From NCBI GenBank assembly GCA_024137785.1, contig JAHRHZ010000032.1:4676604-4708673 (forward strand): a DNA stretch of 32,070 bases, in the 5' to 3' direction. Position numbers and translations under genes: made by a program. This stretch comes from Ginglymostoma cirratum (lineage: Eukaryota). Under the pieces are notes generated by a model. It had not been told where the DNA came from and did no database searches. It was given only the letters and a program-made list of their open reading frames with translations. Positions 13,373 to 32,070 of this stretch are shown here, piece after piece; positions within the stretch are counted from its first letter, which is position 1; each line of letters begins with the position of its first letter.

Positions 13373-16300
13373 AGAGAGTGGTGAGAGTGCAAGCCAGGGG
13401 GCAGCTGGGAAGATAAGGCTTCCTTATGAGACAGCGGCCTCTAATTCACCGGCAGGGGTGGTGAGAACGCGAGCCAGGGGACAGCTGGGTAAGTGAGCTA
13501 ATATATTCGGGCAGTGGCTAAACCCGAAACATTGTGTGGTGACTCCCACCATCCTCCTCTTCTAACTGTGAAAGAAGACAGTGTAGAGAGTCGGTAAGGT
13601 AAGCTTCCTTTTTTTAATCTCTTTGGCATTCTAGAGTAGAGGGGATGAAAGCTAGGGCACTTGCGTGCTCCTCTTGCAGGATGTAGGAGGTAAGGGTCAC
13701 TACTAGTGTCCCTTCTGACTTCACCTGCGAGAAGTGCACCCAACTCCAGCTCCTCACAGACCGCATTAGGAAACTAGAGCTGGAGCTGGATGTACTCCGG
13801 ATCATTCGGGAGGCTGGGGTGGGGGGGTAGAGAGCAGTTATAGGGAGGTGGTCACACCCAAGTTACAGGACAAAGGTAGTTGGGTGACTGTCAGGAGGGG
13901 GAAAGGGAATAGGCAGTCAGTGCAGGGATCCACTGTAGCCATCCCCCTCAATAATAAACATACCGCTTTGGATACTGTTGGGGGGTGGGGCGGGGAGACC
14001 TACCAGGGAAAAGCCATAGCGGCCAGGTCTCTGGCACTAAGCTTGGCTCTGTGGCTCAGGAGGGAAAGGGGGAGAATAGGAGAGTGATAGTGAAAGGAGA
14101 TTCAATAGTTCAGGGAACAGATGGGAGATTCTGTGGTCCCGAGCGAGACTCCCGGATGGTATGTTCCCTCCCGGGTACCAGTGTCAGGGATGTCTTGGAT
14201 CAAGTCTACAAGATTCTCAAGGAGGAGGTTGAGCAGCCAGAAGTCATGGTACACATTTGCACCAATGACAAAATGAGGTAAAGGGTTGAGGTCCTGAAAA
14301 GTGAATATAGGGAGTTAGGTTTGAAGCTAAAAAGCAGGATGAGCAAAGTAGTAATTTCAGGATTACTACTGGTGTCACAGGCTAGTGAGGCCAGGAAGAG
14401 AGAACGACTACAGCTGAACACGTGGCTATGGAGCTGGTGTAGAAGGAAGGGCTTCAGATATGTGGATCATTGAGATACCTTCTGGGGAAGGTGGGACCTG
14501 TATAAGAAGGACGGGTTGCACCTGAACTGGAGGGGCACCATTATCCTGGGTGGGAGGTTTGCTAGAGCTCTTTGGGAGGGTTTAAACTAGTGTGGCAGGG
14601 GGGTGGAAACCAGACCTATGGATCAGAGGATGGGGTAGCTGGTGTACTGGCAGATTCAGTATGCAGAGTCTGTGAGGAAGGATAGACAGTTGATAGGGCA
14701 AAGTTGCAGTCAGTGCAACGGCTTGATGTGTGTCTATTTTAATGTAAGAAGTGTCAAGAATAAGGGTGACGAGCTTAGAGCATGGATCAGTACTTGAAGC
14801 TATGATGTTGTGGCCATTACAGAGACTTGGATAACAGAGGGGCAGGAACGGTTGTTGGATATTCCAGGGATTAGATGTTTCAAAAGAAATAGGGAGGGAG
14901 GTAAGAGGTGGGGGAGTGGCATTGCTAATTAGGGATGGCATCACAGCTGCTGAAAGGGAAGTCGTCGAGGAGGGTTTGTCTACTGAGTCAGTATGGGTGG
15001 AAATCAGAAACAGGAAAGGAGCAGTCACTTTATTGGGAGTTTTCTATCGACCCCCCAGTAGCAACAGAGACACTAAGGAACAGATTGGGAGCCAGATTTT
15101 GGAAAGGTGCAGAAGTAATAGGGTTGTTGTTATGGGTGACTTCAACTTCCCTAATCGACTGGAGTTTCCAAGTGCAAATAGTTTGGATGGCGCAAGTTTT
15201 GTCAGGTCTGTCCAGGAAGGATTTCTGACTCAATATGTAGACAGGCCGACTAGAGGGGAGGCCATATTGGATTTGGTGCTTGGCAACAAACCAGGCCAGG
15301 TGTCAGATCTCTCGGTGGCAGACCATTTCAGTGATAGTGATCACAACTCCCTGACCTTTACTATAGTCATGGAGAGGGATAGGAGCACGCGGTATGCAAA
15401 AGTATTGAATTGGGGGAGGGGGAATTATCATGCTATTAGGCAAGGACTGCAGAGCATAAATTGGGAACAGATATTCTCAGGGAAATGCACGACAGAAATG
15501 TGGAGGTTGTTCAGGGAGCACTTCCAATAAGTACTGGATAGGTTGGTCCCACTGAGGCAAGGAAGGGATGGTAAGGTGAAGGAACCTTGGATGACAAGAC
15601 TTGTGGAACATCTAGTCAAAAGGAAGAAGGAAGCTTACTTAAGGTTGAGGAAGCAAGGATCGGACAGGGCTCCAGAGGGCTACAAGGTAGCCAGGAAGGA
15701 ACTGAAGAATGGACTTAGGACAGCTAGAAGGGGGTATGAAAAAGCCTTGGAAGGTAGGATTAAGGAAAACCCCAAGGCGTTCCATACTTATGTGAGGAAC
15801 AAGAGGATAGCTCGAGCGAGGGTAGGGCCAATCAAGGATGTAGGGGGTCTTTTCGAACTCTAAAAGACACACCATGAGGACGAGTCTTGCTTCAGTAGAG
15901 GCACTTCTTTATTCAAGTTTGCAATCGATTACAGCAGAGAGAGCTCCAAGACACAGTCACACAGGTCGGTCAGGGAAACTCTGAACATGGTGGACAATCC
16001 CCGACTTTTTATGGCTTTACAAAGCATGGTAATTTCTAACTATGTCATCACTGGTCATGAATCTGTCTCTATCTTTGTTCCCCATCTGTCTGTTTTTCTG
16101 ACCCTTGATCCTGATATGGCCTAATGTTATTATGTTATCAGGTTAACATAGTTGAAGATCTACCTCCTTTGTTAATCATGTCAATGTTCCTATTTTGTTT
16201 GCTAACAAGGGGCATTGTTTTCATGCGAGATAGAGTGCCGTTACGTGCTTGTGGATATCAACTTCCCTGTTATTTCGTTATACTTGTATAACGATCTTGT

Positions 16301-17402
16301 TGCTTTGTCAGCCCAGGTGGGTGTATTATCTTGGTCTCACGGTTTGTAATTTATTTAACAAAACGCTGATGAGTTCATTTGGGCCTGTTTAGCTGTCTTC
16401 TTTCTTATTCATTTCAATGGTGCCTCTATCCCTTCCCTTCTCTCCCAGGTATGGCCTAAGCTACATACGGGTTTGTGTACAATATCATGAAGGCTTAGGG
16501 TTAGATGATGGTAGGGGAGTGCTCCTTCAAGGGATAGTGGAGAGAACTTGTGCGTGGAGTCAGAGGAGGTCCTTAATGAATACATTGCTTCAGTATTCAC
16601 CAGTTAGAGGGACCTTGACGTTTGTGAGGACTGCGTGAAACAAGCTGATACGCTCAAACAGGCTAATGTTAAGAAGGAGGATGTGCTAGAAATTTTGAAA
16701 AACATGAGGGTAGATAAGTCCCCTGGGCCAAATGGGATAAACCCAAGGTTACAAAGGGAAGTGAGGAAAGAGATTGCTGCCCCTTTGGCAATGATCTTTG
16801 CATCCTCACTGTCCACTGGAGTAGTACCAGATGATTGGAGGGTGGCAAATGTTATTCCATTGTTCAAGAAAGGGAACAGGGATAATCCTGGGAATTACAG
16901 ATCAGTCAGTCTTACTTCTGTGGTAGGCAAATTATTGGAGACGATGCCGAGAGGTAGTACGTATTATTACTTGGAAAAGCAGTCTGATTAGAGATAGTCA
17001 GCATAGATTTGTGAGGGGGTCGATCACACCTCACAAATCTTATTGAATTCTTTGAGGATGTGACAAAACACATCAATGAAGGTAGAGCCGTGGATGTGGT
17101 GTATATGGATTTTAGCAAGGCATTTGATAACGTTCTGCATGGTAAACTCATTCAGATAGTAAGGAGGCATTAGATTCAGGGAAACTTGGCTGTCCAGATA
17201 CAGAATTGGCTGTCCAATAGAACACGGAGTGTGGTAGCAGATGGAAAGTATTCAGCTTAGAGCTCGGTGACCAGTGGTGTGCTGCAGGAATCTGTTCTGG
17301 GACCTGTGCTCTTTGCTCTTTGTGATCTTTATAAGTGACTTGGATGCAGAAGTAGAAGGGTCGGTTAGTAAGTTTGCCAATGGCACGGAGGTTGGTGGAG
17401 TT
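13373..17402 (+). mobile_element. CR1 LINE with 5' UTR, ORF1 and ORF2 (APE-RT), truncated at the 3' end inside RT; inactive
   Basis: ORF1 ~13645-14590: CSSC..C.KC zinc finger, coiled coil LTDRIRKLELELDVLR, SGNH esterase GDSIV..LPG..HICTND..DGLHLN, with a premature TAG. ORF2 has VAITETW, VVMGDFNFP, SDHN, KSPGPNG, DFSKAFD and ends just after the FADD-equivalent motif. Two ~35-nt repeats in the 5' UTR (~13378 and ~13458). Confidence 0.93.
15839..16529 (-). mobile_element. Solo LTR (691 bp) inserted in CR1 ORF2
   Basis: TG...CA ends (TGTAGGGG / CTCCTTCA), 5-bp TSD with one mismatch (AAGGA 15834-15838 / AGGGA 16530-16534), and CR1 sequence resumes after it. Minus-strand CATAAAAA (16013-16006) and AATAAA (15913-15908). 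Confidence 0.85.
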
Positions 17403-17810
17403 AATGTGGTCGTGGCTGATCTTATCCTGGTCTCAGTTCCACTTTCCTGCCTACTCCCCATAGCCCTTTATTAGAGATTGAAGAAAGGTTTTTCATCAAA
17501 AATATCAATCTGTTGGTTGCCCCAGAGTGCAGTGGAAACAGAACCAGTCAGTTCCGCAGATTCACAACCCTCTGAGAGAAGTCTCAGTCTCTCCTCATCT
17601 CAGCTTTACTCTAGCGTGCAGTGGAGGTCAGGACACTGAATAAATGGAAGGAGCAGACAGACCAATTTTTAATTAGTAACAGGTTAAAGAGTTACGGGAA
17701 GTAGGCAGAAAGGTTAAGGCCGAGATGAGATCAGCCATGATCACATTAAATGGCGGAGCAGGCTCGAATGGATGAATTGCATATTCCCGCTCCTGGTTCT
17801 TATGTTTTAT
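17403..17810. repeat. Two short CR1 3' fragments (minus ~17403-17610, plus ~17612-17810)
   Basis: gtggctgatc...ccactttcctgcc on one side and gatcagccatgatc...aatggcggagcaggctcga...tcttatgttttatg on the other. Confidence 0.7.
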
Positions 17811-17954
17811 GACTGCCTGTATTAGGTAATTGTGTTCACTGTGAACTAGTGCTGCACATCTTGCGTCTGGAAAAGCTTTACAGTCTGTATAAAAAAAACA
17901 AAAGAATTATTCAGAGAAGGCATTTGAAGGCTTCAATGGAACATCGCTTTTGAC

Positions 17955-18007
17955 TTATAAATCTGGAGAAGGTTCTCCATCATCCAGACGAATCATGGCA
18001 TTCCCAT
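17955..18007 (-). CDS. B7/butyrophilin-like gene, putative last coding exon: (D)GNAMIRLDDGEPSPDL*
   Basis: Strong acceptor ttttccttttctttcAG, phase 1 compatible with the IgC donor, open to TAA at 17957-17955, in non-repetitive DNA. Confidence 0.65.
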
Positions 18008-18826
18008 CTGAAAGAAAAGGAAAAGGAAATGTAAAGATATCACTATTGTTGCTGCTCACCATTTCTTACAAGGTGGTAATGTGTAAAACAAGTCCTATCA
18101 TGGAGAAGTCCCACATTGTCAAGGACAACTGAAGACATCTTTAGACTGGGGAAAGCATTTCAAAGTTATCCATGCTAGTTTAGGCCTGACACTCTGCCCA
18201 GCTCAAAAAAAAAGTGAAGATAAGAGAGGGAATGATGACTTCTAACCCTCAACCTGGAGAAGATGATGAGTTTCCTCATATCTCAGCAAAGGCATAGGGC
18301 AACGAGCAAAGACCGAAGACGACTGCTGTTAACAAACAGATGAGACTATCACTTCCGGCCGTGGCGCTCAGCTTCGTCTATCTCATTATCCATATATAGT
18401 CAGTGTCCTGTTCTGAGCAAAGTTTCCCCATCAGCCATGGAGATTAGTATTGCTATACTTCCTCCATCTGGTACTGACATCTGACACCAGTCAACCATTC
18501 TCACTTGCTGTGCGTTGTGTATCTTTTTCTACATATTTAGGTTGTGTATCACATCAAAAGTATTGGTTCTTAAGAAATTTAATTCAACTACCTTAAAATT
18601 TCCTGTGAATTCTTAATGGCTTACATTGTGACTTCCAAACTCTAAATCCTACAAAACTCAATACATTTAAAAGGAGAAGAAAATTTAGAATTGTCCTTAC
18701 ACAGCTTTTAAGGTTGAGTTATTGATGTGCTTTTCCTCTACGTAACAGATATTTATTTTACACAATTTTTGTAATAGTTCGTTAAGTTACATTTAGTATC
18801 AACAATGATCTCAGAACTTGACTCAC

Positions 18827-19114
18827 CTGTGAATGCGACTCGAGTAAGCCTAGGTTTTGCCATGTGCTGGTGCCATACAGAGCAGATATACTGATTTTCG
18901 GAGTCATGGTCTTGTTTCAGATAATGCTCCACGGAGTATAATCCATTTTTGCCTCTGGTCAATTTTGTTTCACTAACTTCATTCAAATCTTTGCCATGTT
19001 TGTCTTCCCACAAAATCTCTGGTGCTGGGTATAAGCCTGAAGATTGGCAAGTCAGCACATCACGGTTATCCCCATTTGATTTCCACACGATACGAACATC
19101 TCCAGTACCTATTG
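18827..19114 (-). CDS. B7/butyrophilin-like gene, IgC exon
   Basis: tttttttcttAG|...G|GTGAGT, 288 nt, phase 1-1: AIGTGDVRIVW...VLTCQSSGLYPAPEILW...NGLYSVEHYL...YICSVWHQHM. The C-x-S-x-G-x-YP-x-P-x-x-x-W and GLYSV motifs are typical of B7/BTN constant domains. Confidence 0.93.
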
Positions 19115-19549
19115 CTAAGAAAAAAATTGTGGTTATTGCAATAACTAATAATAGCATAAATGAATAACAATTTCTGATTTTTCCGAAAGGAACCATATGG
19201 ATAAGCTTCAACCAGTTTTAGAATGTAACAATTTTCAGAACAGCTTTGAACACATATTTAGGACATTTCATATTCTGCGGTCAATAATGTAAGTTTCATT
19301 TATTGCACAACAAATAAAATTTAAAAAAAGGCACTATTTGATTCCCTTATGCTGAAATTACCGGATTTGAGTTAAATAAAAAGGTACCAGAGAAGCATGG
19401 AGGATAACAGGCACGCGGTCATTCAGCCTACTGTTCCTGTGCAGACATTTGGAAAGGTGTTGCTTTGCTATATGCCATATCTCTGCCTTTTCTATCACCT
19501 TATTTATCAGCCTTAACTACTTGTCCTACTGCTACTTGATATGATTTAC

Positions 19550-20820
19550 AGTCAGCATGGCTTTGAGAGGGGCAGATCATGCCTCAAATCTTATTGAATT
19601 CTTTGAGGATGTGACAAAACACATCAATGAAGGTAGAGCCGTGGATGTGGTGTATATGGATTGTAGCAAGGTATTCGATAAAGTTCCACATGGTAGGCTC
19701 ATTCAGAAAGTGAGGAGGCATGGGATTCAGGGAAATTTGGCTGTATGGATACAAAACTGGCTGTCCAATAGAAGACAGAAGGTGACAGTAGATGGAAAAT
19801 ATTCAGCTTGGAGTTCAGTGACCAGTGGTGTGCTGCAGGGATCTGTTCTGGGACCTCTGCTCTTTGTGATCTTTATAAATGACATGGATCAGGAAGCGGA
19901 AGGGTGGGTTAGTAAATTTGCCAATGACATGAAGGCTGGTGGAGTTGTGGAGAACGTGGAGGGCTGTTGTAGGTTGCAATGGGACATTGACAGGAGGCAG
20001 AGCTGGGCAAAGAAGTGGCGGATGGAATTCAACCCAAAAAAGTGTGAAGTGATTAATTTTGGAAGGTTGAATTTGAATGCAGAATACAGGATTAATGGTA
20101 GGATTCTTGGCAGTGTGGAGGAACAGTGGGATCTCGGGGTCCACATCCATAGATCCCTCAAAAGTTCCTACCAAGTCGATACGGTTGTAAAAAAGGCATA
20201 GTGTGTTGGCTTTCTTTGGCAGGGGAACTGAGTTTCTGAGTCATGAGGTTATGCTGCAGCTCTATAAAACTCTGGTTAGACCACGCTAGGAATATTGTGT
20301 TCTGTTCTGGTCACCTCATTATAGGAAAGATGTGGAAGCTTTAGAGAGGGTGCAGAGAAGATTTACCAGGATGCTGCCTGGACTGGAGGGCAGATCTTAT
20401 GAGGAAAGATTGAGGGAGCTAGGGCTTTTCTCATTGGAGCGAAGAAGGATGAGAGGTGACTTGATAGAAGTGTACAAGACGATGAGAGACATAGATAGAG
20501 TGGATAGACAGAGACATTTTCCCAGGGCGGAAATGACTATTACAAGGGGCCATTATTTTAAGGAGATTGGAGGATGGTGGAGGGGAGATGTCAGAGGTAG
20601 GTTCTTCACACAGAGTGGAGAGCGTATGGAATGTGCTGCCGACAGTGGTAGTGTAGTCAGATACTTCACAGACTTTTAAACGACTCTTGGATAGGCACAT
20701 GGAGGATAGTAAAATGTAGGGTACGCAGGGTAGATTGATCATAGTAGGATAATAGGTTGGCACAACATTGTGCGCCAAAGGGCCTGTACTATGCTGTACC
20801 GTTCTATGTTCTATGTTCTG
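19550..20820 (+). mobile_element. 5'-truncated CR1 LINE (RT to 3' end) in the IgV-IgC intron
   Basis: NLIEFFEDVT..VDVVYMD.SKVFDKVPH..QGSVLGPLLF..ALERVQRRFTRM. Ends in (TTCTATG)n. Confidence 0.93.
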
Positions 20821-20962
20821 ATCAACTTGCACCACCTTTACCGGTACGTCATTCTAGATCCCAGTGACGGGATTTTATTTATCAAATGTTTATCCTCCAC
20901 AAATATAAATGATTTTAAATCTATGATTTCAGTTTCATTGAATCCCTACAGCTTGGGATGAC

Positions 20963-21232
20963 GCCATTCAGCCCATCAAGTCCACACTGACCGTCTGAAG
21001 AGCATGCCTCCTAGACCCAGCCTATAACCCTGCATTTCCCATAGCTAATCCACCTAGCCTGCAGACTATGGAGCAATTTTGGTATGGCCAATCCTCCTAA
21101 ACTGCACATGTTTGGACTGTGGGAGGAAACCCACACAGACATGGGGAGAACGTGCAAACTCCACACAGACAGGTGGAATTGAACCCAGTTCCCTGGTAAT
21201 GTGAGGCAGCAGTGCTAACCACAGCCACCGGG
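20963..21232 (-). mobile_element. tRNA-derived SINE (HE1-like)
   Basis: Reverse complement cggtggctgtggttagcactgctgcctcac...gggttcaattccacc, homologous to 9173-9464. Confidence 0.85.
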
Positions 21233-22404
21233 CAGTTACTCACTCACTAGATAGAGCAGGTCGAGAAATAAACTGCTCTATCGAAACCTCTGATCACCTT
21301 GAAAACCTTGGTTAAGCCACCATTTTATCTTCTCTTAACTTTTCAAACTCTCCTCTAAACTGAAATTATACATTCCTGATAAACTTCCACTTTACCCTTC
21401 AACAGACCTTCACATCTTTAGTGAAATGGTGTGTCCAGAATTGTCCATAATACTCCAACTGAGACCTAACTAGTGATGGGTCATTTTCCAGCACTAGCTC
21501 CTTGTTTTATTACAGTGTTCTACGTATTGACCTGAGAAACGAATTGCTTTTTTAATCACCTTGCCATTTTTACAGACATTTTTTGTATGGTCACTCAGGT
21601 CTCTCTACTCATTTGCATTTTCTACAGGCTTCATTTGCTGACACCACATACCATGCACAGTATACTCCAGGAAGATGTTTGCACGTAGTCTAGTGAATGA
21701 GATTTATTGAAGTGTCTTTGTTACTGAGCTGCTGTCAATTTGGTAAAGGCTAGATCCACAGATGGTGTCAGTGGCTCTCAGCTTCAACTTCTGTGTTTTG
21801 GCTGGCTCCTTATCTTTCACTGTCTATATGGTTTCACACATTTTCAGAATTTAGTTATACTTTTAGATTTTGTTTTAATATATAGTTTAACTACCTTCAT
21901 TTTTAAAGAGGTGAAAAGTTTGGGCTGTGGTGGTTAAGAAAGAGAGATGGGGAGATCAAACAGGGCCTATTTTCTCCCGCTCATGGACCCAAAATATCCT
22001 CCCAGTCCTATCCATTCTCTCTCTCTTCTGCCTCCCCCCGCCTGGTCCTTTGTCCACTCACCCCCATTCATTCTTCCCCATCCTCAATCTGTGTTTTTCC
22101 CCTGCCCCAGCACCCAGTCGGTTCTCTGCCCAGTCGACTCCCATTTCAAGCCCACGTCACTTCTACGCACATGTCCAGAATAGACTTTTGTGGTTGATGC
22201 AACAATGTCAATAAACAGGGCCAGAAACTGTGCATACACACAATGCCGTATGAGCGCGTATGCACAGTCACCTCAAAGTTTCAATGTCACCAAACACGGC
22301 TGTCAATTAAAGTACAATACCTGTCTATATCGTTTGTCTCCACATCACTTCACACTTTGCCACATTGAACTTTATCTGTCATGTTTCTGCCTGTTTTGCC
22401 ATTA

Positions 22405-22810
22405 GTTTTAATTCATTTGTGGGATGTGGGCATCACTGGTTGGCCAGCATTTATTGCTTATACCTAGTTGCCCTTGAGAAGGTGGTGGTGAGTTGCCTTC
22501 TTTAACTGCTGCAGTCCACCTACAATGCCCATTAGGGAGGGAATTCCAGGATTTTGACCCAGCAACAGTGAAGGAACGGCGATATATTTCCAAGTCAGGA
22601 TGGTGAGTGACTTAGAGGGGAACTTGAAGGCAGTGGTGTCCCCATATATCTGCTCCCTTCTCCTTCTAGACGGAAGTCGTCATGGCTTTGGAAGGTGCTG
22701 TCTGAGAATCTTTGGTGAATTTCTGCAGTGCATCTTGTAGACAGTACACACTGCTGCTACTGAGTGTTGTTAGTGGAGGGAGTGGATGCGGTGCCAATCA
22801 AGTGGGCTGC
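22405..22810 (-). mobile_element. LINE 3' fragment
   Basis: Minus frame RRSFTVAGSKSWNSLPN. Same family as 10240-11530. Confidence 0.75.
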
Positions 22811-25125
22811 TTATATCTATGTCATTCTGAAACCCAGAACCACCCTAATCTATCGGCTATGTTTAATACCATCTTCAAACTTTATAATGCTACACCCTAC
22901 CCAGACAATACGCTGGTTAGCAACATGAACTGCAATGGACAGTGGCAAAGTTGGTAACACTCTGACCTGAATCAGAATGTTGTGGAGTCTCGTCCCAAAT
23001 CAGATTTTTTAGCAAGACTGGTTATTGAAGGAACCTTCAAACTTGTCATAAAACTTCATTCATTTCCCTTGATATCCTTGATGCATTAACTTTTAATATC
23101 CTGTCCTTTCTCTTCCAATGAGTAGGTTTAGTTTGTAGCTAAGTGATCTTTTTCCTGAATATGCTCCATGTATACATATAATTAAATTGATTCAAGGTCT
23201 AGATGAGCTAAGCTCTTAGTAAACGTTGTCATTTTGATGTTCTTTTTACTCAATGAATATTATTATGATACCAAAATAGACAGCTCAACTCATGTTTTGA
23301 CATGGTTAGTGTGCAATAACCTTTTAAACTATATAAAAGATGAGACCTAGAGGACTCGTTAAGAGAATAATGCTACAAGATTCTAGGTTTTACACAAACA
23401 ATAATACTTTACTCTACAAGATAGAACATTAACACAAAGTACAATACATGCACAAGTTAGTACCCATATTTAACAGGTGGTAAGCATGGGTAATATACTG
23501 TGATGGAACACACCACAGTGCTCATCAAATGTACAGATCCTGTGGATTTCTTAGCAACTCCTCCACCCCAACCCACCGCACACCCCCCTTCCCCCGCTCC
23601 CCTCCCCCCCACCCGATATTAATGACATAGTGGGTCTTCAAATCTGTCAATCCAGCCTTAAACATCCCTTCCAAGAGCCAAATCCAAAAGGCTCCAATTC
23701 TACGTCTGCTCCTGTTCTCGTTAATCATTTCTTGTTTGCTTCTCAACTTTTCACTCTTAGCGTTACTGCCCTACTTGCAGCACCCTGAATCCTGTGAGCC
23801 ATCACAGCTTCCAGAATTTTTCCCTAAGCCTTGACTGCAATGCCTCAGCTGCCTAATAAATCACACAACTTGGTCTGAGTTCTAATACCGCAAGGAAATC
23901 CACCTGTTCTTGACTTCTTCTCACTGTCTCCTCCATGGAACAATCATGAAATTCATTTGTCTTCCACACACAATAGACCTAAATATTAGTTCTTTTGACA
24001 TGGAATCTACTCTGGCTCTTTCATATACCTATTGATCTTCAGTAACTGTAGTGCTTTGAATTCCTATTCAGTTGACCCAAACTGTTCTGTATGATCGATT
24101 AAAAACCTGCAACAAGCTCATCCCCAAACGCCAAATTGAATGCTACCAGCCAGCAACTTTCAGAACTATGTGCACTCTGAATATTATATTTCATAGGATG
24201 CTGGCTTACTTAATACATAAAATTTCTCAAGGATTTCATCACAATGTGTTATTTTCTTGAAATTTTAATGAAGTTTATAAATGGAGTACCTGTACAATAA
24301 TGCATTTTCTTTTCACCTGATTCCATGAACACCACTGGCAAATGCTCCCTTTTCCCATACCTGAGGTTTTAAATTCACCCGAACATAGTGTGGAAAAGAA
24401 TCCGACAGGGAGAATGACCAACCTTTGACAGAGCTATAGATCATAAATGGGATAAGCACCCAATGTGCGATCCTCAAAATTCTGCCTATGTCTCCATGAA
24501 TTGCCATATAAACCAGAATGGCTAAATGCAGAAACAGGACACGTTTCACCAGTTAATACCAGCAGACAGGGGTCAGTTTAGAATGACAAATTGCTGAAGA
24601 TCTGAACAATTCTTTGTTTTGCTGTACTCTCCAGCTCTGAAAGTGATGCAGCTCAACAAATTCACTGCGGCCAATTTTCAACTTCCAATTGTGGTTTCTC
24701 ATCTGTAAGAAGATCAACCAGCAACTGAAAATCAGGGGCATAGTGTTGTAGACTTCAATCTCATATTCTACATGCCAAGTTTACCTAATTCAATTTGCAG
24801 GCTAATCTTGCAGGACTCTGTTTACAATTTTCAGGAACACATTGTTGACCTCTGTCCCAAGCACAATGGGCCCATTTATTCCATGCAGTGGATGGTCTAA
24901 CTAACTATTCTGAATGTGAGACTAAGAGATTATACTTACATTAATGCCTAGTTTAGCTATCCGGATGAGAAGCCATTATTATTGTGTTTCTGTAAAATGC
25001 TTTGCTAGTTACCATAAGAAATAAAAACTGTCCTTCCCTTTGATGTCATTGGCAATCTCTGTAATAATTAAAGAAATTAAACAAATGATTTTAATCGTAG
25101 AAAGAGAGCAGAACAGCTGACATAC

Positions 25126-25464
25126 CCCAAACAGACAGCACAACTGTTCCATCATCGAATCCATCGTTGATACTGACGCTGCACTTGTACGTTCCTTCAT
25201 CCCAAACATTAACATTCTTCAGAGTAAGAGATGCATCTCCTCCCTTGATGCTGCTACCTCCAAGTGCAGTTCTCTTGGTGTAGTTCTTGTGTTGTTCACT
25301 GAAGTCATCCACATTATTCCTGTATTCATGGATGCTTTGTTCTTCACCTACCTTCTCCCAGATCACTGTCGGGTTACTGCCACCTTCGTCAAAGGTACAT
25401 TTGAGAGTGACATCTTTACCAACTTCTGTAACCACATGCTGGTCACAGATTACATCGAATGTCT
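25126..25464 (-). CDS. B7/butyrophilin-like gene, IgV exon
   Basis: ttcattccttatgcAG|...G|GTATGT, 339 nt, phase 1-1: ETFDVICDQHVVTEVGKDVTLKCTF...VIWEK...IHEYRNNVDDFSEQHKNYTKRTAL...GDASLTLKNVNVWDEGTYKCSV...VVLSVW. Q...Y..RT.L and GDASL.L.NV...DEG.Y.C are hallmarks of the B7 (VTCN1/CD276/HHLA2) and BTN V domains. Confidence 0.95.
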
Positions 25465-25675
25465 CTGCATAAGGAATGAAAATTACACAGTTACAAACAA
25501 ATCTTCCAGTAAATATTAACATAAATAACAATACAAACTTCTGATCAAATAAATTTTATACCATTTACACAGGAAGTTGTTATGCCCCTAAAATGGTTAG
25601 ATTGTGATGGGAAACTCTTCCAAGTTTGTTTTCACTCTCATTTGAAGAGATGACATCAGAGCAGGATGAGGTCTA

Positions 25676-25685
25676 GGGAATTCCC
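25676..25685. promoter_or_regulatory. Perfect palindromic NF-kB site (candidate)
   Basis: GGGAATTCCC in unique intronic DNA ~210 bp upstream of the IgV exon, with a CRE-like TGACATCA at 25651-25658. Confidence 0.3.
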
Positions 25686-25711
25686 CAGTCTATGTAAACT
25701 GCTGTTAAGTC

Positions 25712-27200
25712 CATAAGATCATAAGATATAGGAGCCCATTTAGGCCATATGGCCTATCAAGGCTGCTCCACTGTTTGATCATGGCTGATATTTTTTCAAC
25801 CCCATTCTCCTGCCTTCTACTGTGACTCTTGATCCCCTTAACAGTCAAAAACTAATCCATCCCTAATTTAAAGATACTCAATGACTTGGCTTCCACAGCC
25901 TTCCAATGGCAATGAGTTCCACAGATCCACTACCATCTGGCTGAAGAAATTCCTCCACATCTCAGTTCTAAAGAGTCGTACCCTCAGCTCCTAGTCTCTT
26001 CTACTAGTGGAAACACCTTCTCCACATCCACTCTCTCCAAGCCTTGCAGTATTCTGTAAATTTCAACAAGATATACCCCTTGTCCTTCTATACTCCATCA
26101 ACTCCAGGTCCACAGTCCTCAACTATTCCTCACATGACATGCCCTTTATCCCCCAGGATCATTCTTGTCAACCTCCTCTAGACCCTTTACAATGCCAACA
26201 CATCCTTCCTGAGATAGGGGGCCGAAAACTGCAATTGTTATGGGCGAGGCCAGATCCCTTCAAAATATTTTAGGAAGGTAATCTAGACACTAACTTTTTC
26301 TTATTTTAAAGGGAGAGGGGAAGTGGGTGTTTCAGGTGTGATGCAACTTGTCAAACCACACAGCTTCAACCAAAACAGAATGTATTTAAACACTACAGCT
26401 GAAGCACGAACAAAAGAAAGCAGAATTTAGTGTAACTTACCTCTTGGAAAACTTAACCGACCCATTACAGTGACTTATCGGATTGACTGTTCCATTATAG
26501 TAAAATCTCAAACACACCCCTTGGCAAAAAGACAAATTCAAACACAGAATCTTACAGGCAGGAAGGAAGGAACAACATCCAAAGAGATTTCAGAAACTCA
26601 ATCAGGAATCCTTTACTGTAGCTTGCAACACTTCTGCCACTCAAAACATCTTGCGACTGCTACAGCTAAAAAAATTAGAAAAAACCTGAAGTGGGGAGAA
26701 CTGGCCACTCTCCTTCCTTTGTTAACCTGATACTCGTTAGACTCTTTGTCGCATCTGCCTTTACAACCTCTCTACAAAAACCAAGGACCTTTTTAAAGTG
26801 ACAGCATCGTCACACAATGCTAACAGTGCATTTGACTTCATAACTGCCAACTCAACCTGCATGTTAGCCTTAAGTGAATGCTGAACTCAGACTCCAAAAT
26901 CCTTTTGTATTTCAGATTCAGAAGCCTTTCCCCATTTAGAAAATAGTTGACATTTCTCTTCTATCAGATCGCAGAACCTCACACTTTCTAATACTGTATT
27001 CCAACTGCCACTTCTTTGCCACCTCTCCTAGCCTGTCCAAGTCCTTCTGCAGCTTCCCTGTTTCCTCAACACTACCTGCTCGTTCCTCCTACCTTTACGC
27101 CATCTGCAAACCTAGCAACAGAGCCCTCAGTTCCTTCATCCAGATTGTTAATGTATAACATGAACAGTTGTGATCCCAACACTGACCCCTGCGGAACAAT
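25712..27200 (-). mobile_element. CR1 LINE 3' portion, interrupted by a solo LTR
   Basis: Terminal cataagatcataagatatagg repeats. The RT region (reverse of gttccgcaggggtcagtgttggg and tttgcagatgg) lies near 27100-27200. Confidence 0.85.
26236..26814. mobile_element. Solo LTR (579 bp) with 4-bp TSD
   Basis: TGTTA...TCACA ends, with CAAT on both sides (26232-26235 and 26815-26818). Confidence 0.8.
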
Positions 27201-27492
27201 TCCCTAAATTTATTTTTTATAAATATCTCAACCAGCTGTTCCAGTATCTTCATATCTAACTATTAATCTGTTATTTTTAGAGCAATAACATTGGCATACA
27301 TTTGACGGACTGAGTAACCTCTTCTGTGGTATCTCTATGATGCTAGTGTTATAGCTGAACTTACATTTAGAGACTTTCAGGAAGACCAAAAGTTCACTGG
27401 AAAGTCACTTCACAAGTCTGACTCAGGCAGCCTGTGTGCCGGCTCCTGGCTGCTTTAAGCAGACCTCATTTCCACTCCCATTCCATTCAGAC

Positions 27493-27544
27493 CAGAGGTA
27501 ATAAATAATAACAGCGGGCCATATCGCCAGATCCTAACATACAT
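27493..27544 (-). CDS. B7/butyrophilin-like gene, putative signal-peptide exon MYVRIWRYGPLLLFITS(G)
   Basis: Acceptor ctcctttccAG two bases before the ATG (27544-27542), basic n-region and hydrophobic core. The phase-1 donor is weak (G|GTCTGA). Confidence 0.6.
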
Positions 27545-31485: not shown

Positions 31486-31918
31486 GAGAAGATTTGTAGC
31501 TCGGGCTGTGGATGAAGTTGTAGATATGCTCACCGAGCCAGTGGGTTTGGTTGCAAATGTTTCATCACCCTGCTAGGTAACATCATCAGTTCACCTCCGG
31601 TGAAGCGTTGATATTCTGTCCCGCTTGTTACTTATATGCATCAATTTGCTGGGGTGGTCGGTATTACTTCTGGTTTTGTTTCTCAGTGGTTTGTACACAG
31701 GGTCTAATTCAATGTGTTTGTTGATGGAGTTCCGGTTGGAATAGCAGGCCTCCAGGAATTCAAGCCAAACAGAGACACGCCAGGGAATTCCTGGAGGCCT
31801 GGTATTCTAATCGGAACTCCATCAACAAATACAATGAATAACAGCCTGTGTACAAACCACTGAGAAACGAAACCAGAAGTAATATCAACCACCCCAGCAA
31901 ACAGAGGCATATAAATAA
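31486..31918. mobile_element. Penelope-like element fragment in inverted configuration, with hammerhead motif (minus, 31555-31589)
   Basis: Plus frame AKQRHAREFLEAWYSNRNSINK is a GIY-YIG C-terminus. Arms ~31628-31761 and 31785-31918 are reverse complements. The minus strand has CTGATGA-TGTTACC(TAGCAG)GGTGAT-GAAA-CATT. Confidence 0.8.
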
Positions 31919-32070
31919 GAACATAAGAACTAGGAGCAGGAGTAGGCCGGCCAGCCCTTTGAGCCTGCTCCGCCATTCAATAAGATCATGGCTGATCTTT
32001 TCATGGACTCAGATCCACTTACCCGCGCTCTCACCGTATCCCTTAATTCCTTTATTGTTCAAAAAAAAAA
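31919..32070 (-). mobile_element. CR1 3' end running off the window
   Basis: aacataagaactaggagcaggagtaggcc...gagcctgctccgccattcaataagatcatggctgatc. Confidence 0.8.

What the first reader, a model, noticed from the sequence alone, without database searches (positions are those of the whole stretch)
17955..27544. Predicted soluble B7/butyrophilin-like protein (signal-IgV-IgC-short acidic tail, no TM) in a probable shark genome
Seen: four phase-compatible exons (52+339+288+53 nt) join into an open 243-aa frame. The IgV and IgC domains are intact, with canonical cysteines and an NYT sequon. IgC is followed by DGNAMIRLDDGEPSPDL* and I found no spliceable hydrophobic exon. Known: B7 ligands (CD80/86, CD276, VTCN1, HHLA2) and butyrophilins are normally membrane anchored. 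Inference: a dedicated secreted or decoy co-stimulatory or checkpoint-type molecule in the oldest lineage with Ig/TCR immunity, not assignable to a named orthologue by eye.
Basis: partly seen in the sequence, partly recalled or inferred. Interest (0 to 1): 0.78.

Follow-up and report, generated by a model that had tools for sequence, protein, structure and literature searches.

The report
Anchorless shark B7-H4 (VTCN1) gene
This shark gene makes a B7-H4-type immune checkpoint protein that ends in a short conserved acidic tail instead of a membrane anchor, a form shared by sharks, rays and a chimaera and already in sequence databases, though I found no paper describing it.

Summary
The IgV exon (25464-25126), the IgC exon (19114-18827) and the 53-nt tail exon (18007-17955, stop TAA) on the minus strand are real. 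Pfam gives V-set 1.4e-13 and butyrophilin-type IgC 3.8e-14. In one polyA RNA run, 71 reads join IgC to the tail exon. Two spliced contigs from a second sample run from the 3'UTR through tail and IgC into IgV. No other acceptor reached the listing threshold.

Database proteins of 231-244 aa from 10 named shark species, 3 rays or skates and the chimaera Callorhinchus have the same layout. Their tails are homologous (D-G-x-x-M/I-I/V-R-L-D-D-G-x-x-S-x-D-L). None of 16 tested has a hydrophobic segment after the leader. Most are named VTCN1 (B7-H4). The IgV scores best against human VTCN1.

So this is a natively anchorless, probably secreted, B7-H4 orthologue that is old in cartilaginous fish.

Secretion and any decoy function are untested. 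Six literature searches found no description. It is a new variant of a known kind, of moderate interest.

The parts
27493..27544 (-). Unverified.
   Evidence: Sequence. It ranks 4th of 50 ATG-to-GT phase-1 candidates against the orthologue leaders. It has no tblastn match to the orthologue leaders. No reads were laid here. The true leader may lie beyond the window end.
25126..25464 (-). IgV exon (339 nt, phase 1-1) with the NYT sequon and a canonical cysteine pair plus one extra N-terminal Cys
   Evidence: V-set 1.4e-13. 85% identical to Stegostoma VTCN1-like. Its 3' end is joined to IgC in 123 reads.
19115..25125 (-). Intron 2, holding a reverse-transcriptase fragment on the + strand (19557-20201)
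   Evidence: RVT_1 2.2e-17. Depth falls to about 0-1 just above 19114.
18827..19114 (-). IgC exon (288 nt, phase 1-1)
   Evidence: C2-set_3 3.8e-14. RNA depth is about 120-170 against 0-8 in the intron.
18008..18826 (-). Intron 3 (819 nt, GT..AG on the minus strand)
   Evidence: Joint 18007|18827, 'skips 819, CT..AC', in 71 reads of X19 and in contigs of X7 and X8.
17955..18007 (-). Tail exon coding part: D-GNAMIRLDDGEPSPDL, then TAA
   Evidence: It aligns to the C-termini of the orthologues at 83% (15 of 18) to Stegostoma. The tail is present in 18 of 19 relatives' sequences that I read.
17101..17954 (-). 3'UTR, contiguous with the tail exon. At least 854 nt; the end was not determined.
   Evidence: Contigs of X7 and X8 run unbroken from 17101 to 18007. 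X19 depth is about 120-150 down to 17162. The lower part runs antisense through LINE-derived sequence.

Best explanation
This is the orthologue, in an orectolobiform shark, of VTCN1 (B7-H4/B7x). Its mRNA encodes leader-IgV-IgC followed by a 17-residue hydrophilic, net acidic tail and a stop, with no transmembrane or GPI-type hydrophobic segment. Unlike mammalian B7-H4, the protein is therefore made as a free, most likely secreted, two-Ig-domain ligand.

This anchorless layout and the tail are shared by sharks, batoids and a chimaera, so it was probably already present in their common ancestor. It is not a splice variant or a shed product.

Inferred, not shown:
- It is secreted and binds the still unknown B7-H4 receptor as a humoral regulator of lymphocyte activation.
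- The conserved tail (turn-former DG, a short alternating strand, turn-former DDG, C-terminal D/E-L) folds back on the IgC domain or serves as a docking hook.
For: Domains:
- IgV matches V-set at 1.4e-13 and IgC matches C2-set_3 at 3.8e-14.

RNA:
- 71 reads at 52 starts join 18827 to 18007 in polyA run X19.
- Contigs of 1624 and 1645 nt in X7 and X8 (one sample, a different study) span 3'UTR, tail, IgC and into IgV.
- All listed loose ends at the IgC donor and the tail acceptor are the same joint (checked).
- Intron depth is 0-8 against about 130 on the exons.
- The stop codon lies in the last exon, contiguous with at least 854 nt of UTR.

Conservation:
- One search returned nine shark proteins of 237-244 aa, with E down to 6.5e-58.
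- One search added three named batoids and one unnamed contig.
- Searches gave Callorhinchus, at 236 aa.
- Searches added Hemiscyllium and Cetorhinus.
- Isoforms X1 and X2 differ by 0-1 residue.
- In 16 of 16 sequences the highest 19-residue Kyte-Doolittle mean after residue 30 is 1.32 or less.
- The tail exon is 52% identical on average among 11 sharks and 46% among all 16. IgC gives 53% and 49%.

Identity:
- The window IgV scores 54.0 bits against human VTCN1 IgV (4gos) and 39.9-44.8 bits per CD276 IgV. The alignment to VTCN1 is ungapped through the shared SEQ motif, where CD276 lacks four residues.
- With the 13-sequence profile, VTCN1 IgV alone scores 80.1 bits, as much as IgV plus IgC of CD276 at 80-86 bits.
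- In seven species the source's name is VTCN1 without '-like'.
Against: - The leader exon is not established in this window.
- Only two RNA samples of unknown tissue gave reads. X20 gave none.
- No bony-vertebrate VTCN1 sequence could be brought in, so there is no tree and no synteny check.
- Callorhinchus entries of the same cluster are named CD276-like, BTNL2 and BTN1A1-like.
- The IgC exon's best solved relatives are CD276 and BTNL8, and no VTCN1 IgC is solved.
- Two rows of the loose-end table were not shown.
Confidence: 0.65

Rival explanations
1. The protein is displayed on cells after all. The conserved tail docks non-covalently on a membrane protein, or on a partner chain, so the molecule works as a surface ligand without its own anchor.
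For: The tail is as conserved as the IgC domain, with near-invariant G, DDG and terminal L. That is more than a mere stop-gap ending needs.
Against: The Pristiophorus, Leucoraja and Callorhinchus tails depart from the motif.
Confidence: 0.15
2. The anchorless mRNA is only one isoform. A TM or GPI exon further downstream or outside the window is used in other tissues.
For: Only two samples gave reads. The window ends 17.9 kb downstream of the stop.
Against: No junction from the IgC donor other than to 18007 reached the threshold of 3 reads, against 71 reads plus 23 short overhangs for the tail joint. The hydropathy scan of the minus strand below 19200 gave ten segments. The one I read, in intron 3, has 13 hydrophobic residues and then a stop, and I did not check the splice sites of the other nine. 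The TM parts of three relatives find nothing in the window. All models read from 14 named species are anchorless, and their isoforms differ by 0-1 residue.
Confidence: 0.05
3. It is not the VTCN1 orthologue. It is a chondrichthyan-specific secreted member of the B7/butyrophilin group, and the automatic pipelines named it by best hit.
For: Callorhinchus members are named CD276-like, BTNL2 and BTN1A1-like. The IgC is of the butyrophilin C2-set_3 type, and BTNL8 gives the best two-domain score at 111.5 bits. The Atlas neighbours are named butyrophilin-like.
Against: The IgV alone scores 80.1 bits against human VTCN1, against about 50 for IgV-only PD-L1 or MOG entries, and 54.0 against 40-45 for CD276 IgV. 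Seven species carry the name without '-like'.
Confidence: 0.2
4. In this species the protein is not secreted. Either the leader is defective, so the protein is cytosolic or the gene is decaying, or the conserved C-terminal D/E-L keeps it in the secretory pathway.
For: The orthologues' best N-terminal windows score 1.4-2.6 in 15 of 16 sequences. The terminal x-D/E-L is near-invariant.
Against: The coding exons are intact, the gene is expressed at depth about 130, and it is 79-85% identical to Stegostoma. The real leader may simply lie outside the window. From what I recall of the KDEL-type retention pattern, the ending does not fit it.
Confidence: 0.08

Closest known systems
Mammalian VTCN1 (B7-H4, B7x, B7S1)
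   Same: Leader-IgV-IgC ectodomain. The IgV is the best solved match (4gos: 54.0 bits to the window exon, 80.1 bits to the chondrichthyan profile). The orthologues carry this name in public annotation.
   Different: Mammalian B7-H4 is a type I membrane protein with only two cytoplasmic residues (PMC5413580, passages read). Here the last coding exon gives 17 hydrophilic residues and no hydrophobic segment.
Soluble B7-H4 (sB7-H4) of human and mouse serum
   Same: A free B7-H4 ectodomain in body fluids. [quoted passage not shown]
   Different: The mammalian form derives from a gene that encodes a membrane-anchored protein. Here the germline gene encodes only the free form and adds a conserved tail.
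CD276 (B7-H3)
   Same: The second-best IgV match and the best solved IgC match. Callorhinchus entries are named CD276-like.
   Different: CD276 IgV scores 40-45 bits against 54 for VTCN1, and it lacks four residues at the SEQ motif. CD276 is membrane anchored (recalled).
Butyrophilins and BTNL proteins (BTN1A1, BTN2A1, BTN3A, BTNL8)
   Same: The IgC belongs to Pfam C2-set_3, 'Butyrophilin subfamily 3 member A2-like'. BTNL8 scores 111.5 bits over both domains.
   Different: There is no TM, no small-exon stalk and no B30.2 domain. The mRNA ends after the tail exon.

Membership tests
B7 family of IgV-IgC ligands | N-terminal V-type plus membrane-proximal C-type Ig domain | tested here: met
   V-set 1.4e-13 and C2-set_3 3.8e-14.
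B7 family of IgV-IgC ligands | One Ig domain per exon, phase 1 boundaries | tested here: met
   Exon ends read. Junctions seen in RNA.
B7 family of IgV-IgC ligands | Cleavable signal peptide | tested here: inconclusive
   The orthologues have hydrophobic leaders. The leader exon of this locus is unverified. No signal-peptide predictor was on hand.
B7 family of IgV-IgC ligands | Transmembrane (or GPI) anchor after IgC | tested here: not met
   The tail exon is hydrophilic and is followed by a stop and the UTR in RNA. None of 16 orthologues has a 19-residue window above 1.32 after residue 30.
VTCN1 (B7-H4) orthologue group | IgV closest to VTCN1 among B7/BTN IgV domains | tested here: met
   54.0 bits against 39.9-44.8 for CD276. 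The profile gives 80.1 bits on the IgV-only entry 4gos, against about 50 for IgV-only PD-L1 or MOG. This covers solved structures only.
VTCN1 (B7-H4) orthologue group | Groups with bony-vertebrate VTCN1 in a phylogeny | not tested
   No bony-vertebrate VTCN1 sequence was returned. One search lists only the best 150 hits, and these are dominated by multi-Ig proteins.
VTCN1 (B7-H4) orthologue group | Conserved flanking genes | not testable with these tools
The ten window ORFs scanned outside the gene gave only retroelement domains or nothing.
VTCN1 (B7-H4) orthologue group | C-terminal hydrophobic anchor with a two-residue cytoplasmic tail (mammals, PMC5413580) | tested here: not met
Butyrophilin / BTNL | TM, stalk of small exons and a cytoplasmic B30.2 (PRY/SPRY) domain | tested here: not met
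   The transcript ends after the tail exon. No match to the TM or cytoplasmic parts of relatives, apart from the IgC exon itself.

The most novel reading that the evidence does not exclude
B7-H4 began as, or became in the chondrichthyan stem, a humoral checkpoint factor. All cartilaginous fish would then make only a free form with a conserved C-terminal hook, and the minimal anchor of mammals (two cytoplasmic residues) would be the derived state.

The pair could be a linked ligand-receptor couple. [quoted passage not shown]
Probability: 0.06. Interest if true: 0.88.

Novelty: new variant of a known kind. Interest (0 to 1): 0.55.

Why it matters
B7-H4 is an immune checkpoint ligand and a drug target whose receptor is still unknown. 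In mammals the free form is a by-product linked to disease.

A whole vertebrate class that encodes only a free form, with a tail conserved from chimaera to sharks, shows that the ectodomain can act without its own anchor. It gives a natural soluble probe for receptor hunts in shark leukocytes. It also raises the question of which state, anchored or free, is ancestral.

For genome annotation, it shows that the short models in RefSeq are real and not truncated predictions.

Tried and rejected
Hidden TM exon. A hydropathy scan of all three minus-strand frames below 19200 gave ten segments. The only one in intron 3 (18344) gives 13 hydrophobic residues after a possible acceptor and then a stop, and it has RNA depth of about 1. 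The other nine lie 9.5 kb or more downstream, and I did not read their splice sites. tblastn with the TM and cytoplasmic parts of three relatives found only the IgC exon. Paralogous Ig exons in the window: none.

Leader exon.
- The candidate at 31924-31858 is strongly hydrophobic and phase-compatible. I rejected it because it sits inside a transposon-like inverted repeat and next to a common shark repeat.
- An in-frame ATG at 25522, contiguous with the IgV exon, cannot be excluded. It overlaps the polypyrimidine tract of a good acceptor.

Orthology by tree or synteny was not possible. The big profile search (8671 hits at E up to 0.001, 285 at 1e-30) lists only 150 hits, mostly long multi-Ig proteins. 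The only new two-domain relative it gave was Callorhinchus.

Literature searches found no paper on shark or cartilaginous-fish VTCN1/B7-H4 or on an anchorless form. Flajnik et al. 2012 (PMC3709836) and Hansen et al. 2009 are not held; I saw only their citations. Supplementary files were not opened. Those of PMC13262535, which tabulate IgSF conservation by species, may list shark VTCN1.

The third homologous-protein search was left unused. Bony-vertebrate VTCN1 shares too few exact words with these sequences to be caught.
Full report
What is in the sequence. The gene lies on the minus strand. The four exons have the stated coordinates and lengths: 27544-27493 (52 nt), 25464-25126 (339), 19114-18827 (288) and 18007-17955 (53, ending in TAA). 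Each has AG before it and GT after it, and all boundaries are phase 1. The window has no N and no soft-masking. Translated alone, the second exon matches Pfam V-set (1.4e-13, 51 bits). The third matches C2-set_3, 'Butyrophilin subfamily 3 member A2-like Ig-C' (3.8e-14, 53 bits). There is no second copy of either exon in the window.

RNA evidence. The look-up of sequencing runs returned 20 runs; 18 hold at least part of the stretch and none of those holders is on record as RNA. I laid four runs on 17000-19400: two raw-read RNA runs of the same species label (X19, polyA; X20) and two contig runs of one sample whose share of words (0.26) was close to the exon share of the stretch.
- X19 gave 1205 laid reads. 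X20 gave none, so it is no test.
- In X19 the summed depth of the two mate orientations is about 120-170 over most of the IgC exon. It is about 120-150 from 17162 to 17971 and 0-8 in intron 3.
- The joint 18007|18827 (skips 819; CT..AC on the + strand, so GT..AG on the minus strand) is shown by 71 reads at 52 start places. One contig each in X7 (1624 nt, depth 138) and X8 (1645 nt, depth 119) also shows it. Both contigs run unbroken from 17101 to 18007, jump to 18827-19115 and continue.
- The continuation, also seen in 123 X19 reads, equals + strand 25127-25156, which is the 3' end of the IgV exon.
- The loose ends listed at 18827 (17 reads) and 18010 (6 reads) are the two sides of the same joint. 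No other acceptor for the IgC donor reached the listing threshold of 3 reads. Two rows of that table were not shown.
- So IgV-IgC-tail-3'UTR is the only listed form in two samples from two studies. The stop lies in the last exon, and the UTR is at least 854 nt. The library is unstranded, so the strand follows from the splice sites. The tissues are unknown to me because the runs are coded.

Relatives. The ORF around the IgV exon, scored on the exon part, found nine proteins of 237-244 aa (E 6.5e-58 to 1.1e-33, 85-57% identity). [quoted passage not shown] The ninth is an unnamed transcript contig.
- All nine end, after the IgC domain, in a 16-18-residue hydrophilic tail that aligns with the window's. 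The Pristiophorus tail is the most divergent.
- tblastn places the Stegostoma protein on the IgV exon (80% identity), the IgC exon (79%) and the tail exon (15 of 18 residues).
- A profile of the nine added Pristis, Amblyraja, Leucoraja and one more contig, at 231-238 aa, with the same kind of tail. Leucoraja's tail is shortened.
- The exhaustive profile search added a Callorhinchus milii cluster. Its 236-aa member ends in a recognisably homologous tail.
- Cluster look-ups added Hemiscyllium and Cetorhinus. They also showed that the isoforms labelled X1 and X2 are identical or differ by one residue. A 282-aa Chiloscyllium entry differs only by an N-terminal extension, and a 271-aa Callorhinchus entry is an intron read-through.
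- In 16 of 16 sequences tested, the most hydrophobic 19-residue window after residue 30 averages 1.32 or less, and the last 17 residues average -0.2 to -1.25.
- Mean pairwise identity of the tail exon is 52% among 11 sharks and 46% among all 16. That is close to the IgC exon (53% and 49%) and below the IgV exon (64% and 55%).

Which family member. Against solved structures, the window's IgV exon scores 54.0 bits on human VTCN1 IgV (4gos) and 39.9-44.8 bits on each CD276 IgV domain. The VTCN1 alignment runs ungapped through the shared SEQ motif, where CD276 lacks four residues. With the 13-sequence profile, the IgV-only VTCN1 entry scores 80.1 bits. That is about as much as IgV plus IgC of CD276 (80-86 bits), and well above the IgV-only entries of PD-L1 and MOG (about 50 bits). 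BTNL8 gives the best two-domain score, 111.5 bits. No VTCN1 IgC is solved, so the IgC says only 'CD276/butyrophilin-like'. Seven species carry the name without '-like', which to my knowledge reflects an orthologue call by the annotation pipeline. Callorhinchus entries are named CD276-like, BTNL2 and BTN1A1-like. I could not obtain bony-vertebrate VTCN1 sequences or flanking genes (closed; one search lists only 150 hits). Orthology is therefore probable but not proven.

The weak point is the leader.
- The orthologue leaders are similar to each other (consensus).
It shares only the first M and an L-L-F run with the consensus.
- It has two arginines and a hydrophobic core of five to six residues.
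- It found no tblastn match and ranked 4th of 50 candidates.
- The best-scoring alternative, 31924-31858, lies in a transposon-like inverted repeat.
- An ATG at 25522 contiguous with the IgV exon is possible.
- The contigs extend about 90 and 118 nt beyond the IgV exon, but their letters were not shown.
- The true leader may lie beyond the window end.

How it most likely works.
- Shown: the mRNA encodes IgV-IgC plus a hydrophilic tail and nothing else, and this layout is conserved in Chondrichthyes.
- Inferred: the protein enters the secretory pathway, because the orthologues have normal leaders. It is released, and it acts as a soluble ligand for the unknown B7-H4 receptor.
- Mammalian B7-H4 is a type I membrane protein with two cytoplasmic residues and an unidentified receptor (PMC5413580, passages). 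Its soluble form is reported to block the surface form (PMC2760136, listing and abstract start).
- If cartilaginous fish have no surface form, 'decoy' is not the natural reading. A humoral agonist, or a molecule held on cells through its tail, fits better.
- The tail reads as turn (DG), a short alternating strand, turn (DDG) and a terminal D/E-L, which suggests a hairpin on the IgC edge or a docking peptide.

Novelty. The gene models are public, so the gene is not new. My six literature searches and the passages read in PMC13262535, PMC11599192 and PMC5413580 do not mention a cartilaginous-fish VTCN1 or an anchorless germline B7-H4. Two key reviews were not available, and supplements were closed. 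I rate it a new variant of a known kind.

Context from this scan, unchecked. Earlier notes call this genome nurse shark (s1-879313). They also place a transcribed NKp30-like VJ receptor gene in the window that starts 5445 nt beyond this window's end, on the 5' side of this gene (s1-878914). That note judged the receptor to have no working ligand beside it, but it did not consider this intact, expressed gene. This is a lead only.

Noticed in passing
window 13800-17500 (+), overlapping the gene's 3'UTR at 17101-17500: A LINE with an endonuclease ORF (14916-15530; Exo_endo_phos_2 6.7e-10) and reverse-transcriptase-like ORFs lies on the + strand. The VTCN1 3'UTR runs antisense through its 3' part.
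   Followed up: partly
window 19557-20201 (+), in intron 2: Reverse-transcriptase fragment (RVT_1 2.2e-17).
   Followed up: partly
window 31625-31761 and 31785-31921: Inverted repeat with 137-nt arms, 88% complementary and 23 nt apart, next to a repeat also seen near 17790. It looks transposon-like. It holds a hydrophobic ATG-to-GT ORF that mimics a leader exon.
   Followed up: partly
orthologues P0010-P0013 and P0165, IgV domain: The four batoid proteins and the Callorhinchus protein lack the second canonical IgV cysteine (Y-x-C becomes Y-I-F, Y-I-V or Y-K-L). They carry other cysteines near the N-terminus (in batoids also C-x-x-x-C), so the IgV disulfide pattern differs from that of sharks. 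The window, Stegostoma, Chiloscyllium and Hemiscyllium have one extra N-terminal Cys, which may be unpaired.
   Followed up: no
window 25155-25024 (-), another frame over the IgV exon's 3' end: An out-of-frame ORF begins with a peptide that matches the orthologue leaders in 6 of its first 8 residues (tblastn E about 1.2-1.6). This is chance level and the position is implausible for a leader.
   Followed up: no
window 19108-19114 (-): A second AG lies 6 nt inside the IgC exon (cttag|caatag|) and would give an in-frame form two residues shorter. The listed loose ends support 19114. Minor use is not excluded.
   Followed up: partly
window 17317, 17423, 17467, 17593, 17744, 17803: Differences between runs in the 3'UTR. 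17744 C>T is in 109 of 146 X19 reads and in the X7 and X8 contigs. 17593 C>T and 17803 T>G are only in X7 and X8. A 7-nt deletion at 17317 is only in X8. These are probably alleles or individuals.
   Followed up: no
An acceptor-like cctttccag lies 2 nt before the ATG at 27544, so that exon, if real, may not be the first.
   Followed up: no
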